A stretch of DNA of 64,000 bases, from contig RHPI01001831.1 of NCBI GenBank assembly GCA_009103225.1, positions 13,102-77,101 of the forward strand, read 5' to 3'. This DNA comes from Chlorokybus atmophyticus. Its lineage: Eukaryota > Plantae > Mesostigma and Chlorokybus algae. Positions within the stretch are counted from its first letter, which is position 1. Each line of letters opens with the position of its first letter. Both the position numbers and the translations under genes were made by a program. The notes beneath the pieces were generated by a model. It was not told where the DNA came from and made no database searches. It was given only the letters and a program-made list of their open reading frames with translations. Below are positions 43,284-49,700 of the stretch, piece by piece.

Positions 43284-45915
43284 TCATATGTTGGATTGAG
43301 AAGAGGAGCGTAAATGCCAGTCGAACGGCCCGCTCGTGCTCGTGATGTGCGCCTCGTTCAGAAACGTCTCCTGATCGCGATGCGTGGTGGTCAAGTAGAA
43401 GCCCCAGTGATAGTGCGCTCGTATCCTGCACGCCACAACACGTGCCACATTTGAGCAAGCTCCTTGCGCTGTGTCATGATAATGCAGTTATTGGGAGATC
43501 CAAGAAAGTTGGTGTAATACTGTGCGACCAACTACAGACTGTGCAATGTGTCTCACCGTGAGTCTATGTATGCACGTGTGCACGTGCGTGCATGCGTGCG
43601 CATGAGAGTGCGTGCATGCATGCATGCATGCAAGCGCTCGGCGGGTGTATGCGCACGCATGTGTGTGTGTGCTTACCACAAGAAGAAGGACAGCAGGATG
43701 AGGCCGGACATGATGCCCGCAATGGACGGTTGGCTGAACTGCATCCATGAGATGGTCACGACGTTTGCCATGAAGCACGGCACCGCTATTGAGAACAGCC
43801 GGAAAGCAAAGCGCCAGTCGTCTTCGCACCTGCATAGCACACAAAACGAAACATGCCATGTAAAGTTGGGCTGCTGCACACCACCGCACAGTTTGCATTG
43901 ATAATGAGTATGAAGTGCATGGTATTGTATTAGCTGAAAAGGGTCGAACATTGTGTAAGTCAAGTTGTGTACCCGCAGTAATACACGCACACAAACATGC
44001 ATATTTAGTGTACACACAGGAGCACCATGCACACGCATGCGCACAAAGACACGCACACACATTTGACGCGCGCGCGCGCATCCACCCGCACACGCTTGCA
44101 CTCGCACGCACACGCGCACACACGCACACACACACACCTCAGCTGCCAGTGCATCTGGAACGTCCTTTTCGGCGCGGGCGGCCTGTCTCTTTCGGGGTCT
44201 CTGGGTCCGAGCGCGAACCGTCGGCACCGCATCATGAACTCCTCCTCCGCGGCCTCCGAGACGTACGTCTGGCCGTTCTTCAACACGGAAGCGAGCATGA
44301 GGGTGGTGGTCATGAGAGAGGTGGTCATCAGGGAGACCTTAGGATAGGAGGTGTGTGAGAAGAGTGGAGAGAATGATGAAGGCAGATGTACGCAAAGCAT
44401 TCAGAAACACGCACCGCTACGAGGAATATGACTGAAAAAAAAGGACAACGTCTCGCTTGCATGCATGCACACGCACATGCGATGTCTAACGACGAGACAC
44501 ATATATACGCTTGCGAACGGATGCATGCATACACATTGGATGCACAAGCTGTGGGCGTTGGACACAGGCCACAAAACAAAACAACGCTGCCACACAAGTC
44601 TTCATCACTCTACTGCACTTACCACAAGAGCTGTGGATATCCCATAAGCTGCAAGAAGCGCCTGCAGCACGGTTCGCATGGGTTCAATGAGACAAGCTAT
44701 GTGGAATCCCAACAACAAGGGATGTTGTGGTGTTGTTGTCACACTCACGAGGGACAGCGTGCGGCCCTGGAAGTTGAGCTGCGTGAGGGCGGTGAGCTGG
44801 AAGCCCGCGAAGAGCGCGGCCAGGTTGGAGAGGGACCTCAGCTGCTCCGACTTCTCCTCCACGTCCCGACGGTTCTTCTCAACAAACCTGTGATGTTTGT
44901 GTGTATGCGTGTGAGCACGCGCGTGCGAGCGCGCGTGTGCACGTGTGCAAGTGTGCAAGTGTGTACGCAAGTGTGCGTGTATGTGCACGTGCATGTGCGT
45001 GTACCCACGTGTGTGCGTGCGTGTGCATGTTGATCACACGATACTGCTATCAACCCAAGATGTGAGAGTCAGTAGTAGCAACCACATGGGCGATGCATGC
45101 ACGAGGAGCGCACCGGTTCCACAAATAGCGCGCATTGTCGGCTTCTCTCTGCTCCCAGTCCAGCCCTCGCCATCTGCCGCAAACACAACACAACAAAACA
45201 AACAGAATCAGGTGCATGTTTGTGAAGTAACCCAAAGTCAACACTCCCTGCGCAGCAAAAGAAACTGAGACAAGAATTCACTGCTGTTTCAAGCAAGCTG
45301 TTGCATGCAACAGAGGCTGCAAGTGACAAACCCGGTGGTGATTTGAGTTTTCAGCTTGGCATGAAGTGCAGACATGCACGCACATCAGCAGGCACGCATT
45401 GACACACATAAATAGTGGTTCACGCACGCACGCACCACTCATTCACACTAAGTGTGGGTGAGCGAGCGAGCGAGCCAGTGAATACTCGCTCACTGGCTCA
45501 CTCGCTCGCACCCACACTTAGTCAGTCACATTCTCACTCACCTTCGCTCTTCTTCTCTCCATTCTCTCTCCTCCTGTCTGTTGCGCCTCTTGTCAAGCGC
45601 CTCCTCTAGCTCCTCCTTCTCCGCATCGCCTCCTGCACCTCCTACGCCTACAGCCTGAGCCTCATAGTAGGACTCTGAGTCCGAGAAATACTGCTGCTCC
45701 CCTCCAGCGCTGTGGTAACTCTCTCCGCCTCCTCCACCCAATCCTCCTCCTCCTCCTCCTCCTCCTCCTCTTCCTCCTCCTCCTCCTCCTCCTCCTCCTC
45801 CTCCTGCTGCTCCGCCTCCTCCACCTCCTCTTGGTGGTCGTCCACTTCCGCCTGCTTGCCCGTTAGAGTAGTAGTAGCGGTCTATCTCGGGTGAGACCCA
45901 GCGCCGGTCGGCCAT
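43284..45915 (-). CDS. ORAI: Orai (CRAC-channel)-like membrane protein, algal type; 7 exons
   Basis: Exons join in phase: WREEERR|WRGLDWEQREADNARYLWNR|FVEKNRRDVEEKSEQLRSLSNLAALFAGFQLTALTQLNF..SL|ALLAAYGISTALV|VSLMTTSLMTTTLMLASVL..|CEDDWRFAFRLFSIAVPCF..|IRAHYHWGF..PFDWHL; four hydrophobic segments. Confidence 0.8.
45740..45830. repeat. (GGA)n coding repeat (poly-Gly) in Orai exon 1
   Basis: Direct reading of (TCC)n on the + strand. Confidence 0.9.
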
Positions 45916-46464
45916 CAGGCCATTTGACTACTGAACATGCGCGCTCAGCTGGGCGGCGTGCTTTGGCGTGGCCTGGTCTGGTCTGGCCCGAGCCAGGCCG
46001 ACGACGCACGGCTAACGGCGAGGACTTCTGGGAGAGTGAAGTGTGCCCGCGGTCTACCGTTGCCGTTCCCTGTGTAACACGAATGTCTCCTGACAACTGC
46101 TGCAACTGATGTGTTGACTATTCAACGCTCACTGAACACAAAGATTACAGGTACAATCAATGCGGAAGGCAATTGCACATGCGCATGCACATGATTGTGA
46201 ACGATGCTTCACACATCACGTTTAGAAACAATACTCTGAGCTTCGCTTTATGAGTCACAAACACTGTATGACATCTGCAAATGATGCGAGTACAATCATG
46301 CAGCCAACATTCAGGTGCAGCCAGTGCACCCACGTAGCTAATCACATCGTTGGCTACTATGTTGACGTGCGGTTGCTATGATTGTTCCCATTTCGTCATT
46401 GTCAGGCAGTCACTCTGCTGCCCCGCCTGTGACAAACAGCATGCTCATGGAAGTGATGCAGCAT

Positions 46465-46772: not shown

Positions 46773-49700
46773 TCAAGCCGGCAACGTTTCAATGTCGTTA
46801 GCGCTGAACCGCATGCACTCGTCGTACAGTGCGGAGTTAAGCATCTCCGCGGTGAATGTGTCATCTCGCACCAACGACAGCGCGCTGTGGTAGTATTCGA
46901 TCGCGTCGGCGAGCCTGCCTTGCAGGTGACAGGTGTAGCCGAGTGCAGCGAGCGTGCTGCCGCGCTGCGGAGACAGGCAGAGTGCCTTCTCGTACCACAG
47001 CACAGCCTCTCCATACACCCTGAACACATGTTCACATTCACTGAAGCCTTGTAAGTCTGGGACCGGACCACGACCTTAAGGCTTGCTTGGAAACGACTGT
47101 GATTGTTGGAAATCTACACAGCGAACACGCATGTTACTCACTTGCGCTTGCGCAGTGCGTGCGCAAGGTTGACAATAGTAGCCTCCCAAGCGTCTCCAAG
47201 AGGCAGTGGTGCCAAGCTGAGAGCCCTTCTGAAATATCCTTCCGCTTCAGCAAACCTGATGCATGGCACATGAGCTCCTGCCAAATATGCCGACTGGTAT
47301 TGCAGACTTTCCTCTCAATAGTTGCATTCGGTGAAGCAGCTTCCATGTCTACCGGAAGTGACACTGGCTAAGCTTGCCAGAGAGGGGTTGTGTAATAAGA
47401 TGTGTCAGTGATACAATGACGCTTACTGCTGGTTGCGGAAAGCGAGCACTCCCAGCTCGTTGTAGAGGAGAGGATCGGTCTGGCAGACGGTGTGCGCTTG
47501 GACGAGGTACTGTTCGGCCAGGTTGGCGTTCAGTGTCCTCATGTACTCCATACCGATGCACAGCAGGGGCAAGTGACATCCAGGAAACAATCTGGCTGCT
47601 GTTCGGTACGCCGCCATAGCTTGGTCGCTCTCCTCTTGAGCTACACACAACCAGCCGTGAGTTTGTGTGCCACACCAGTCACATTTGCAATCAACTAGTA
47701 CTTGACACCGAGCTAAGAGCATGCATGCATGCATGCATAAGCTGTCAACACGCCCACCGGCAAAAGCGTGCCCAAAGCCTATCCACGCGGGCAGAAACAT
47801 GGCCTCCAAGGAGGTTGCTTTACTGTCAGCAAACAGACAAATTGAAAACACGGGGTTGCAGTCTCAAAGCACTGGCAGCGCAGAAACATCACATGGGCCA
47901 TAAGCACAGTTTGCTGAAGGAAGCAACGCAATGTACCTAAAGTGCCGTCGCGCAGCTTCAAACTGCTGTGTGCAATAGTAGTAGCAGCCAACTGCAAACC
48001 AAGCTATGGCCCTGCGGCACACATGTTACCATACATACGCTTGCACACTTTTGTTCAGTGGATTGGCTGAACAACTCATTAAACAAGCCCGTGCCTTTTG
48101 GGGTATTCCTGTACAAGTTTGTGCGCTCGCAAAAACAAATCGTTCTTCTGCTTCAGCTCTACGGCGGATGCCAGATGGACTGGCAGGCACATAAGATCAT
48201 ATGGATCCTTCTCAAGGAGCCTGTCATGCCAGTGCCACATCAGTTACCAACACCAAAACAAAGCCAATCGCATACATGTGGATTACGTAGCAGTGTTGCA
48301 ATGCTAGATTCCAGGCACCCCAGGAGTGAGAGAAGTTTTTGCGGCCACTGGCAATAGCTGCAGCCTCAGCTTGTGTGTGGTTACCTTGTGGTGAGTTCGT
48401 AGGATAATTGGTACTGTCCGTTGTGATAGAGATAGTCAGCTTGATACGCAGCAACACAAGGGTTTTCCTTCAGGCTTACGCGCACTCCGCAGCAGTCCAC
48501 CCCAGACTCTAACGTGGATATTTCTGCCTCAAAGCTAGGCTGGTTGTACTGCAGCACAGATGGATGGCATCAACACCAGTGTCCAGATGTTGGTGTGCAC
48601 AACGTTGTCAAGTCCAACACTGCTTCAGCCGCATGGCACTGTGATCTTGCCAGGGACACAAGGATGCAGCCTCACGGGAATGCAATCACACGTTTAAGTC
48701 ATCACTGACCTTTTTCGTTTTGCACTTGTACAATAGCAGCAACCACTGATCCTCCGGTTTGATTGCCAAGGAGTTCAGGAGCTGATGTTCTGCGTATGTG
48801 TTATGATGTAAACACAACATGCAACAGTGCACTTTCGCGAGCAGGATGCGCACCATCCTTGCTGGAGATCATATGATTATTGATGATGTGCTCAAACGCC
48901 TGCAAACAGCAAGAATCATAAATAGTACGAAGACTTGTGTAGCAACGCAGGTCTTGTAAGGAGTGGAGTACACATGTACTCTCTGCCACACCCACACCCA
49001 ACAACAACTGACAACGTTGCTGCTCACCTCATAGCAGTACGGGTCCTTGCTTAGTGCTGCTTTGTAACTGGTGGCACAGCCATGCTTGTAAGCACTCTCA
49101 CCTCAAACTCCCATGAAGCATATTTACGCACGCATGACAGCTGCAATCATACCATTGCAAAGCACGAGGCCGGTTCTCTTGGGAATCGTGAATACGGCCC
49201 TTCAGCAAGAAAGTGACGGCCTCCAGCTGTTAACAAACAATGGATCACACAGCAGGCAGGCTGACTCAGCGGGCCTGTGACAGGCAAAGTGTATCGCACG
49301 TTGATACCGCTGGAAGCTGTGCCTATTGCAAATGTCGGAGATTGAATACTCAAGTCGGCATCCATAGCACCCACACCATTGCTGCTGTCATTGTCAGCCT
49401 CAAGCAGAGTTACCGCCTCATCCCACTCTCGGCAAGCTTCCTGTGAATGTTGCAACACCATCGCAGACTCAAAAACAACAGGCGCTGTCAAGAGACCATA
49501 CATACACGGATTAAGCGCTACACTTTGCGTACAATAAGAGATTATACTGCCGGGCCCAACCCACTTGATACCACTGGGTTGCGTCATGAAGATACAATGT
49601 AGGTAAGTGGCTTGACACCATAGCGCATATATCAATAACGCATATTCTACTTACCAGACACTTGGCAGAAAGGTAGCGAAACAATGGATGGGCAGCAACC

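What the first reader, a model, noticed from the sequence alone, without database searches (positions are those of the whole stretch)
44779..44860. Orai-like channel with Gln at the Ca2+ selectivity-filter Glu and Thr at the hydrophobic gate
Seen: TM1 reads EQLRSLSNLAALFAGFQLTALTQLNF (codon CAG at 44781-44779, ACC at 44793-44791). Anchoring GF on human ORAI1 G98-F99 (SSRTSALLSGFAMVAMVE) puts Q at E106, T at V102 and N at R91. Established: ORAI1 E106Q does not conduct Ca2+, small or polar substitutions at V102 give STIM-independent, poorly selective open channels, and green plants lack STIM. Inference: the gene is intact (7 exons in phase) and may encode a STIM-independent channel with different selectivity, or a non-conducting regulatory subunit.
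Basis: partly seen in the sequence, partly recalled or inferred. Interest (0 to 1): 0.75.

Follow-up and report, generated by a model that had tools for sequence, protein, structure and literature searches.

The report
Gln-pore Orai channel gene in Chlorokybus
This alga's expressed Orai channel gene carries glutamine where animal Orai channels have the glutamate that makes them calcium-selective; the same swap is fixed in every named land-plant relative of this type and in many green algae, so plant 'Orai' is probably not a classical calcium-selective channel.

Summary
A 7-exon GT-AG gene on the minus strand (45915-43284) encodes a 368-aa Orai-family protein. Three exons each pass the Pfam PF07856 cut-off. 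Spliced transcript contigs from two studies show five introns as exact joints and imply the sixth. They carry CAG and ACC unchanged. A family profile aligns TM1 without gaps to Drosophila Orai crystal structures (E about 1e-14). That places Gln181 on E178/E106, Thr177 on V174/V102 and Asn166 on K163/R91.

The organism is Chlorokybus atmophyticus. The public gene model of this locus is truncated.

The Gln is not a private oddity. Among 291 relatives, 151 have Gln and 128 have Glu. Gln-type taxa include Chara, Closterium, mosses, lycophytes, Ginkgo, Trebouxiophyceae and Sphaeropleales. Glu-type taxa include Mesostigma, Chlamydomonas, Tetraselmis, Ostreobium, prasinophytes, diatoms and animals. 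Trees need at least 3 E/Q switches, and an AU test rejects a single Gln clade (p=1.6e-8). Thr at the gate is rarer (29/291). Within the streptophyte Gln type it is seen only here.

Function is inferred: a conserved Orai pore without the high-affinity Ca2+ site. No paper searched describes this. The scan had not noted an Orai elsewhere in this genome.

The parts
43284..45915 (-). Orai-family gene, ATG to stop, 7 exons, 368 aa
   Evidence: Phase and GT-AG check; spliced contigs; Pfam PF07856 on exons 3, 5 and 6
45542..45915 (-). Exon 1: start codon, poly-Gly tract, charged WR/EE-rich N-terminus
   Evidence: The exon 1-2 joint 45173/45542 stands in an X2 contig. No Pfam hit.
45114..45173 (-). Exon 2: conserved 'NARYLW' stretch preceding TM1
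   Evidence: conserved column block in A2
44749..44887 (-). Exon 3: cytosolic TM1 extension plus TM1 (pore helix)
   Evidence: Pfam Orai-1 39.8 bits, profile positions 2-40; 0 differing letters in transcript contigs
44779..44781 (-). CAG = Gln181, at the position of the selectivity-filter Glu (human E106, fly E178)
44791..44793 (-). ACC = Thr177, at the position of the hydrophobic-gate Val (V102/V174)
44800..44805 (-). Gly173-Phe174, equivalent to G98-F99 (hinge and gate), conserved
   Evidence: The position of Phe174 (human F99) reads Phe in 271 of 291 relatives. Gly (G110 of the first sequence) is at least 90% conserved in alignment A2.
44824..44826 (-). Asn166, at the position of R91/K163
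   Evidence: Asn in 208 of 291 relatives
44623..44661 (-). Exon 4: start of TM2
44138..44337 (-). Exon 5: rest of TM2 and the long conserved cytosolic TM2-TM3 loop
   Evidence: Pfam Orai-1 28.6 bits, profile positions 64-107
44158..44265 (-). Loop motif YVSEAAEEEF...DRPPAPKRTF, shared by Gln-type and Glu-type green-lineage Orai and absent from animal Orai
   Evidence: Consensus of A2; published alignment
43677..43829 (-). Exon 6: RCEDDWRFAF, TM3 and the first part of TM4
   Evidence: Pfam Orai-1 26.9 bits, profile positions 107-151; hydropathy
43284..43425 (-). Exon 7: end of TM4, C-terminal tail, stop codon
43314..43331 (-). C-terminal GPFDWH motif (family consensus GLPFDWH)
   Evidence: Motif found in 82/93 Glu-type and 48/67 Gln-type relatives of at least 280 aa

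Best explanation
Shown: this is the Chlorokybus atmophyticus member of the green-lineage Orai family (PF07856). The gene is intact, transcribed and spliced as modelled. It has four hydrophobic segments. Its pore helix keeps the Leu, Gly and Phe of animal Orai but has Gln at the selectivity-filter Glu position, Thr at the gate Val position and Asn at the R91 position. It belongs to a large Gln-type class that arose from Glu-type Orai at least three times. That class has stayed fixed across Chara, Zygnematophyceae, mosses, lycophytes and Ginkgo. Inferred: it assembles like other Orai proteins into a hexameric pore whose outer ring is six uncharged Gln side chains. It therefore lacks the single high-affinity Ca2+ site that makes CRAC channels Ca2+-selective. 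Only one basic ring (Arg at the K87 position) lines the inner pore, against three in animals. The most likely function is a gated channel with relaxed cation selectivity, possibly still passing Ca2+ at low affinity. In Chlorokybus the hydrophobic gate would be weakened by Thr177. Gating would not use STIM, which the literature reports as missing from the green lineage. It would instead use modules shared by Gln-type and Glu-type green Orai: the charged N-terminal helix, the long acidic TM2-TM3 loop and the C-terminal GLPFDWH motif.
For: Family membership: Pfam Orai-1 on exons 3, 5 and 6, collinear, and on the public model P0012 at 107.6 bits. The profile hits Drosophila Orai structures at E about 1e-14 with an ungapped TM1. 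Expression and codons. Organism: P0012 is the EukProt/JGI Chlorokybus atmophyticus protein and is identical to the window over all shared stretches. Distribution: Gln 151 versus Glu 128 of 291, with named taxa. Convergence: 5 changes on the tree, at least 3 forced by well-supported branches, and 0 of 200 bootstrap trees with one change. An AU test rejects one Gln clade at p = 1.6e-8. Constraint: exon 3 is 56-70% identical to the fragments of alignment A1 and 68-78% identical over the matched stretch to the closest hits of the big search. Pore-lining Leu and Phe are near-invariant and Gly is at least 90% conserved. Land-plant Gln-type branches are short. Mutant phenotypes in human ORAI1: PMC6647248. 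STIM is reported absent from plants and green algae: PMC11085791 and PMC8318260.
Against: No Gln-type Orai has been recorded electrophysiologically in anything I could find. In human ORAI1, E106Q gives no current at all, so a Gln ring could mean no conduction. Hexamer formation, membrane location and ion selectivity are untested. Whether Chlorokybus also has a Glu-type paralogue could not be checked. The Chlorokybus branch is long (0.8-1.2 changes per column), so some relaxation of constraint cannot be excluded.
Confidence: 0.5

Rival explanations
1. It is a non-conducting or conductance-tuning subunit. Gln-type protomers co-assemble with a Glu-type Orai paralogue and lower the number of Glu residues in the ring, as E106Q does dominantly in human ORAI1.
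For: E106Q is a loss-of-function mutation in human ORAI1 (PMC6647248). Streptophytes carry both types: Diphasiastrum has two Gln-type genes and one Glu-type gene (P0228, P0269, P0277). A Psilotum transcriptome has a Glu-type sequence (P0107), and Mesostigma is Glu-type.
Against: For most named Gln-type taxa (Chara, Closterium, mosses, Ginkgo, Chlorella, Coccomyxa, Tetradesmus) no Glu-type partner appeared in either search. Only one Chlorokybus protein was found, and the scan noted no other Orai in this genome. A silent subunit would not need its pore-lining Leu, Gly and Phe so strictly conserved.
Confidence: 0.15
2. It still works as a Ca2+-selective, store- or signal-operated Ca2+ entry channel. 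Ca2+ would be coordinated by the Gln carbonyls or by other residues, so the swap has little functional effect.
For: The rest of the protein, including the regulatory motifs, is the same in the Gln and Glu types. From memory and untested here: plant CNGC channels are Ca2+-permeable with Gln in their filter.
Against: The Glu ring is the only high-affinity Ca2+ site in Orai, and E106Q abolishes current in human ORAI1. No column gains an acidic residue consistently with the E-to-Q switch; only the S93-equivalent column co-varies, Ala against Ser/Thr. Chlorokybus has no acidic residue in the 10 residues after the filter, and one Arg.
Confidence: 0.15
3. It has a changed permeant species or a non-channel role. 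With a neutral mouth and one basic ring, the pore could favour anions or small neutral solutes, or the protein could act as a scaffold.
For: The filter is neutralised. The Chlorokybus outer loop has no acid and one Arg. There is an animal precedent for an Orai-derived family without Ca2+-binding residues: Jiraiya/TMEM221 (PMC7016017).
Against: There is no direct evidence. Most Gln-type relatives keep 1-3 acidic residues in the outer loop. The acidic cytosolic TM1 extension (EEK.EQL) is invariant in both types.
Confidence: 0.12
4. It is a gene drifting under relaxed constraint, on its way to loss, as in angiosperms.
For: The Chlorokybus branch is long. Exon 1 carries an unusual poly-Gly N-terminus.
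Against: The frame is intact, the splicing is correct and transcripts appear in two studies. All family motifs are retained. The Gln is fixed in all named streptophyte Gln-type relatives.
Confidence: 0.03

Closest known systems
Animal Orai / CRAC channel pore subunit (human ORAI1-3; Drosophila Orai, PDB 4HKR, 6BBF, 7KR5)
   Same: Same Pfam family and four-TM layout. TM1 aligns without gaps, and the L95, G98 and F99 equivalents are kept.
   Different: Gln replaces the E106/E178 filter residue, Thr replaces V102, Asn replaces R91 and Ser replaces R83. The cytosolic TM2-TM3 loop is long and conserved. The C-terminus carries a GLPFDWH-type motif, and by inspection it shows no obvious heptad-Leu coiled coil like the one that binds STIM1. 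The literature reports no STIM in this lineage.
Glu-type green-lineage Orai (Chlamydomonas Cre01.g025000, Mesostigma P0037, Tetraselmis, Ostreobium, Cymbomonas)
   Same: Same architecture, N-terminal WR/ED repeats, loop motif, C-terminal motif and Asn at R91.
   Different: These proteins keep Glu at the filter and Val or Ile at the gate.
Streptophyte Gln-type Orai (Physcomitrella PpOrai1, Selaginella P0024, Chara P0016 annotated 'Ca2+ release-activated Ca2+ channel family protein', Ginkgo P0226)
   Same: Gln at the filter within an LTQ motif. The first sixteen residues of exon 3 (FVEKNRRDVEEKSEQL) recur exactly in many of these proteins, and exon 3 is 68-78% identical over the stretches matched by the closest hits. 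The best tree puts Chlorokybus on their side of a branch, with weak support of 55.
   Different: They have Val (Ile in Chara) at the gate where Chlorokybus has Thr. Chlorokybus also has Gln after GF and no acidic residue in the outer loop.
Human ORAI1 point mutants E106Q and V102T
   Same: The same residues at the same positions.
   Different: Those are single changes in a pore with three basic rings that is gated by STIM1. Here the whole pore context differs, so the phenotypes (dead pore; leaky pore) cannot be carried over directly.

Membership tests
Orai protein family (Pfam PF07856) | Significant match to the family profile | tested here: met
   Exons 3, 5 and 6 score 39.8, 28.6 and 26.9 bits against a cut-off of 25, and match the profile in collinear order. 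The public model P0012 scores 107.6 bits.
Orai protein family (Pfam PF07856) | Four transmembrane helices with TM1 as the pore helix | tested here: met
   Four hydrophobic segments, with TM1 the weakest as in Orai. TM1-TM2 and TM3-TM4 align to Drosophila Orai chains.
Orai protein family (Pfam PF07856) | TM1 pore-lining L95, G98 and F99 equivalents | tested here: met
   Leu170, Gly173 and Phe174 are present. Leu is seen in 266 and Phe in 271 of 291 relatives.
Orai protein family (Pfam PF07856) | Hexameric assembly around a central pore | not testable with these tools
CRAC channel (functional class: STIM-gated, highly Ca2+-selective Orai) | Ring of Glu at the outer mouth (E106 human, E178 fly) | tested here: not met
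   Gln181, codon CAG at 44781-44779, also present in transcripts.
CRAC channel (functional class: STIM-gated, highly Ca2+-selective Orai) | Hydrophobic gate Val (V102) plus Phe (F99) | tested here: inconclusive
   Phe is kept and Val is replaced by Thr. V102T is constitutively active in human ORAI1.
CRAC channel (functional class: STIM-gated, highly Ca2+-selective Orai) | Basic inner pore (R83, K87, R91) | tested here: not met
   The equivalents are Ser, Arg and Asn, so only one basic ring remains.
CRAC channel (functional class: STIM-gated, highly Ca2+-selective Orai) | STIM partner and a STIM-binding C-terminal coiled coil | not tested
   STIM absence in the green lineage is taken from the literature. 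By inspection the C-terminus carries GPFDWH and no obvious heptad-Leu coil. No STIM search of this genome was possible.
Gln-type green-lineage Orai (class proposed here) | Gln at the filter column within an otherwise conserved green-type Orai | tested here: met
   Gln is 100% in the streptophyte, Sphaeropleales and Trebouxiophyceae groups, and Glu is 100% in the three Glu groups.

The most novel reading that the evidence does not exclude
Gln-type Orai is a distinct channel class that has been conserved since early streptophyte evolution. It arose by convergent E-to-Q replacement at least three times. Every named Gln-type taxon lives in fresh water or on land, while the named marine green algae keep Glu; habitats are from my own knowledge and were not tested. 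If so, the 'Orai Ca2+ channel' credited to mosses, lycophytes and gymnosperms is not a CRAC-like Ca2+-selective pore. It would instead be a re-tuned channel suited to dilute media, gated through the shared loop and GLPFDWH modules by an unknown partner. Chlorokybus, with Thr also at the gate, would be the leakiest natural version.
Probability: 0.35. Interest if true: 0.75.

Novelty: new variant of a known kind. Interest (0 to 1): 0.55.

Why it matters
Reviews of plant calcium signalling list Orai as a Ca2+ channel retained up to gymnosperms, and ask whether store-operated Ca2+ entry exists without STIM. The sequences show that the streptophyte proteins of this gene's type, starting with Chlorokybus, lack the one residue that gives Orai its Ca2+ selectivity. 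They also show that this state is conserved and recurrent rather than decay. That turns a vague question into a testable one: what does a natural Gln-ring Orai conduct, and what gates it? It also gives CRAC-channel biophysicists natural E106Q and V102T backgrounds that evolution has kept, so they are presumably functional.

Tried and rejected
- phmmer of exon 3 alone against PDB found nothing. A profile of relatives was needed.
- The word search with exon 5 found no candidates because of the length window.
- Six paper searches found no paper that describes the Gln; a seventh, pairing Orai with Chlorokybus, and an eighth, pairing Orai with Physcomitrella, also found none. Collins and Meyer 2011 and Edel et al. 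2017 are not held, so prior mention there cannot be excluded.
- A second Orai copy in the window: none.
- A compensating acidic residue that tracks the E-to-Q switch: none. Only the S93-equivalent column co-varies.
- 'No acid in the outer loop' as a Chlorokybus peculiarity: rejected, because several full-length relatives share it.
- A single origin of all Gln types: rejected by the AU test.
- A single origin within streptophytes or within core chlorophytes: not rejected.
- Taxon of the Logan fragment P0009: only a run accession was returned.
- The joined 368-aa model was translated locally for the phase check, hydropathy and comparison with P0012. P0012 stood in for it in the trees.
- No structure or complex prediction was run.
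Full report
**What is in the window**

On the minus strand, a gene runs from an ATG at 45915 to a stop ending at 43284. It has seven exons:
- 45915-45542
- 45173-45114
- 44887-44749
- 44661-44623
- 44337-44138
- 43829-43677
- 43425-43284

Every intron is GT-AG. The exons join in phase to 1107 nt, or 368 codons. CAG (Gln) lies at 44781-44779 and ACC (Thr) at 44793-44791.

Searched exon by exon by reference, exons 3, 5 and 6 each exceed the Pfam gathering score for Orai-1 (PF07856). They score 39.8, 28.6 and 26.9 bits and match profile positions 2-40, 64-107 and 107-151 in order. Hydropathy shows four hydrophobic segments. No second Orai copy lies in the window.

**Expression and codons**

Contigs of two public runs from two studies (2013 and 2021, same organism) lie on the locus in spliced form. 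The joints are at 43424/43676, 44335/44621, 44660/44748, 44885/45112 and 45173/45542, all with CT..AC ends, which is GT..AG on the gene strand. Intron 5 is implied by the contig numbering across a repeat-masked stretch. There are no differing letters over exon 3. The gene is therefore transcribed and spliced as modelled, and the transcripts carry CAG and ACC. These are contigs, not raw reads, so rare variants would not be seen.

**Organism and annotation**

The best hit of the exhaustive protein search, P0012, is the EukProt/JGI protein Chlat1/3034 (Chrsp206S03286) of Chlorokybus atmophyticus. It is identical to my model wherever both exist. However, it starts from a wrong-frame reading of exon 2, and it lacks 27 residues of exon 5 and 11 residues of TM4. 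The transcript joints support my model, so the public model is truncated. This independently confirms the earlier scan notes that call the genome Chlorokybus.

**Residue mapping**

A profile of 26 full-length relatives (A2) hits the Drosophila Orai structures 4HKS, 4HKR, 6AKI, 6BBF, 6BBG and 6BBH at E = 9e-15 to 1e-13. TM1 aligns without gaps. The family GF falls on G170-F171, the family Q/E column on E178 (human E106), the residue four before it on V174 (V102), and the family Asn on K163 (R91). The published alignment of human ORAI1-3 with Chlamydomonas and Physcomitrella gives the same register (PMC11085791 Data S2).

The window protein therefore has:
- Gln181 at the filter position
- Thr177 at the gate position
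- Phe174, Gly173 and Leu170 conserved
- Asn166 at the R91 position
- Arg162 at the K87 position
- Ser158 at the R83 position

**Is the Gln special to this gene? No**

The published alignment already shows Physcomitrella PpOrai1 with ...GFAVVTLTQF..., while Chlamydomonas, human, diatom, brown-alga and oomycete sequences have Glu.

A word search with exon 3 found 11 exon-sized fragments, all with Gln. The exhaustive search with exon 3 gave 121 representatives. A profile search gave 131 more clusters. Over the 291 proteins fetched, the filter column reads Gln in 151 and Glu in 128. The gate column reads V 192, I 34, T 29, S 14 and A 10. The R91 column reads Asn in 208.

Named Gln-type taxa:
- Streptophyte algae: Chlorokybus, Chara braunii, several Closterium, and Spirogloea-type 'SM' gene ids (the organism is inferred from the id style)
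- Mosses: Sphagnum species, Ceratodon, Physcomitrium
- Lycophytes: Selaginella (two genes), Diphasiastrum (two genes)
- Gymnosperm: Ginkgo (inferred from the 'Gb_' gene id)
- Trebouxiophyceae: Chlorella vulgaris, Coccomyxa species, [Myrmecia] bisecta, Apatococcus, Asterochloris
- Sphaeropleales: Chromochloris, Tetradesmus, Monoraphidium

Named Glu-type taxa:
- Mesostigma viride, Chlamydomonas, Tetraselmis, Ostreobium, Cymbomonas and Picocystis
- the haptophyte Diacronema
- a divergent second land-plant paralogue, found in Diphasiastrum P0277 and a Psilotum transcriptome (P0107), with Trp at R91, Thr at V102 and Glu at E106

The Thr+Gln combination also occurs in Asterochloris and in a set of Scenedesmaceae-like sequences. 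Within the streptophyte Gln type, only Chlorokybus has Thr.

**Phylogeny**

I built an IQ-TREE tree (LG+C20+F+G4) of 67 rows with ultrafast bootstrap and SH-aLRT support.

The streptophyte clade (97/92) is an unresolved four-way split:
- Chlorokybus (Gln)
- Mesostigma (Glu)
- the land-plant Trp/Thr/Glu clade (100/100)
- a Gln clade of Chara, Zygnematophyceae and land plants (97/92), which itself has two subfamilies, each containing Zygnematophyceae and land plants

The core-chlorophyte clade (100/98) contains:
- Ostreobium and Tetraselmis (Glu)
- Trebouxiophyceae (Gln, 98/89)
- Sphaeropleales (Gln, 100/100)

The best tree needs five E/Q changes. Well-supported branches force at least three, and none of 200 bootstrap trees allows a single change. 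The quick tree of 74 rows agrees. An AU test rejects holding all Gln rows together (delta lnL 168, p = 1.6e-8). A single origin within streptophytes that includes Chlorokybus is what the best tree shows, with weak support of 55. A single origin within core chlorophytes is not rejected (p = 0.21).

The Gln state is therefore recurrent and, once acquired, stable across very deep clades. Land-plant Gln-type branches are short. Across the three independent contrasts, only one other column tracks the switch: the S93 equivalent, which is Ala in Gln types and Ser/Thr in Glu types. No acidic residue is gained elsewhere.

**Shared architecture**

Gln and Glu types share features that animal Orai lacks:
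- N-terminal WR..ED repeats leading into NARYLW.RFVEKNRRDVEEK.EQLK
- a long TM2-TM3 loop of the form GK.YVSE.EEAEF...PGDRPP.P.RTF..W..RCE..WR.AF
- a C-terminal GLPFDWH motif

The window protein has all three: exons 2-3, 44158-44265 and 43314-43331.

**Mechanism (inferred)**

In human ORAI1, E106Q abolishes current, V102A/C/G/S/T open the channel without STIM and lower its selectivity, and V102I/L/M behave like wild type (PMC6647248 Table 1). The literature reports STIM as absent from plants and green algae.

A Gln ring removes the only high-affinity Ca2+ site. The green-type pore also has one basic ring instead of three, so the dead-pore phenotype of E106Q need not carry over.

My best reading, at about even odds, is a functional Orai pore with relaxed cation selectivity. 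It would be gated through the lineage's own cytosolic modules, and in Chlorokybus the Thr would additionally weaken the hydrophobic gate.

The rivals are:
- a silent or tuning subunit for a Glu-type partner
- retained Ca2+ selectivity by other means
- a changed permeant species or a non-channel role
- decay of the gene

None can be settled without electrophysiology.

**Comparison and novelty**

The protein is a member of the Orai family. It fails the features that define a CRAC channel: the Glu ring, the basic pore and a STIM partner.

I found no paper that notes the Gln in plant or algal Orai. Searches combining Orai with land plants, glutamine and selectivity filter, or with E106Q and algae, returned nothing. 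The diatom paper whose supplement contains the moss Gln speaks only of the 'conserved glutamate'. Two key reviews are not held, so earlier mention cannot be excluded.

I rate this a new variant of a known kind. The interest lies in the class, not in this one gene.

**Limits**

- P0012 stood in for it in the trees.
- Many relatives come from metagenomes or run assemblies without names.
- The 'Spirogloea' and 'Ginkgo' labels rest on gene-id style.
- Habitats are from my own knowledge.

Noticed in passing
window 43284-45915 versus P0012: The public JGI/EukProt model of this locus (Chlat1/3034, 201 aa) is truncated. It has a wrong-frame start in exon 2, lacks 27 aa of exon 5 and lacks 11 aa of TM4. 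The transcript joints support the 368-aa model.
   Followed up: yes
P0277 (Diphasiastrum), P0107 (Psilotum transcriptome), P0278, P0288, P0125: Lycophytes and ferns carry a second, divergent Orai paralogue that keeps Glu at the filter. It has Trp at the R91 position (R91W is the human SCID mutation), Ser at G98 and Thr at V102. It forms a 100/100 clade inside the streptophyte group.
   Followed up: partly
P0037 (Mesostigma viride): Mesostigma, usually placed next to Chlorokybus, has a Glu-type Orai (GFALISLVEF). The two earliest-branching streptophyte algae therefore differ at the filter.
   Followed up: partly
P0013 (Chromochloris), P0014 ([Myrmecia] bisecta): These gene models contain two Orai domains in one protein, both Gln-type. 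They are probably tandem genes fused by annotation.
   Followed up: no
P0211, P0213, P0268: Some metagenomic Glu-type relatives also carry a precomputed hit to PF15038 alongside PF07856. If PF15038 is the Jiraiya family, as I recall but did not check, this fits the proposed common origin of Orai and Jiraiya/TMEM221 (PMC7016017).
   Followed up: no
window 45447-45522 (intron 1): Imperfect inverted repeat: 28-nt arms, 86% complementary, 8 nt apart, flanked by a perfect 14-nt pair. It could be a hairpin or a small inserted element.
   Followed up: partly
window 45734-45842 (exon 1): A GGA/GGC repeat encodes a run of about 40 mostly Gly residues in the N-terminus. The reads tool masked it as a repeat, so transcript support for this stretch is indirect.
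   Followed up: no
window 45916-45945: Two very short upstream ATG-started frames (MFSSQMA-stop and MA-stop) precede the main start codon in the transcribed 5' leader.
   Followed up: no
window 46776-47018 (minus strand): The last exon of the upstream neighbour encodes TPR repeats, with a weak ANAPC3-like hit. It may be an APC/C-type TPR subunit.
   Followed up: partly
window 43580-43670, 44020-44140, 44900-45060: The introns of this gene are rich in GC/AC-type low-complexity runs (GCACAC, GTGCGT). Unrelated contigs of run X6 matched only there.
   Followed up: no
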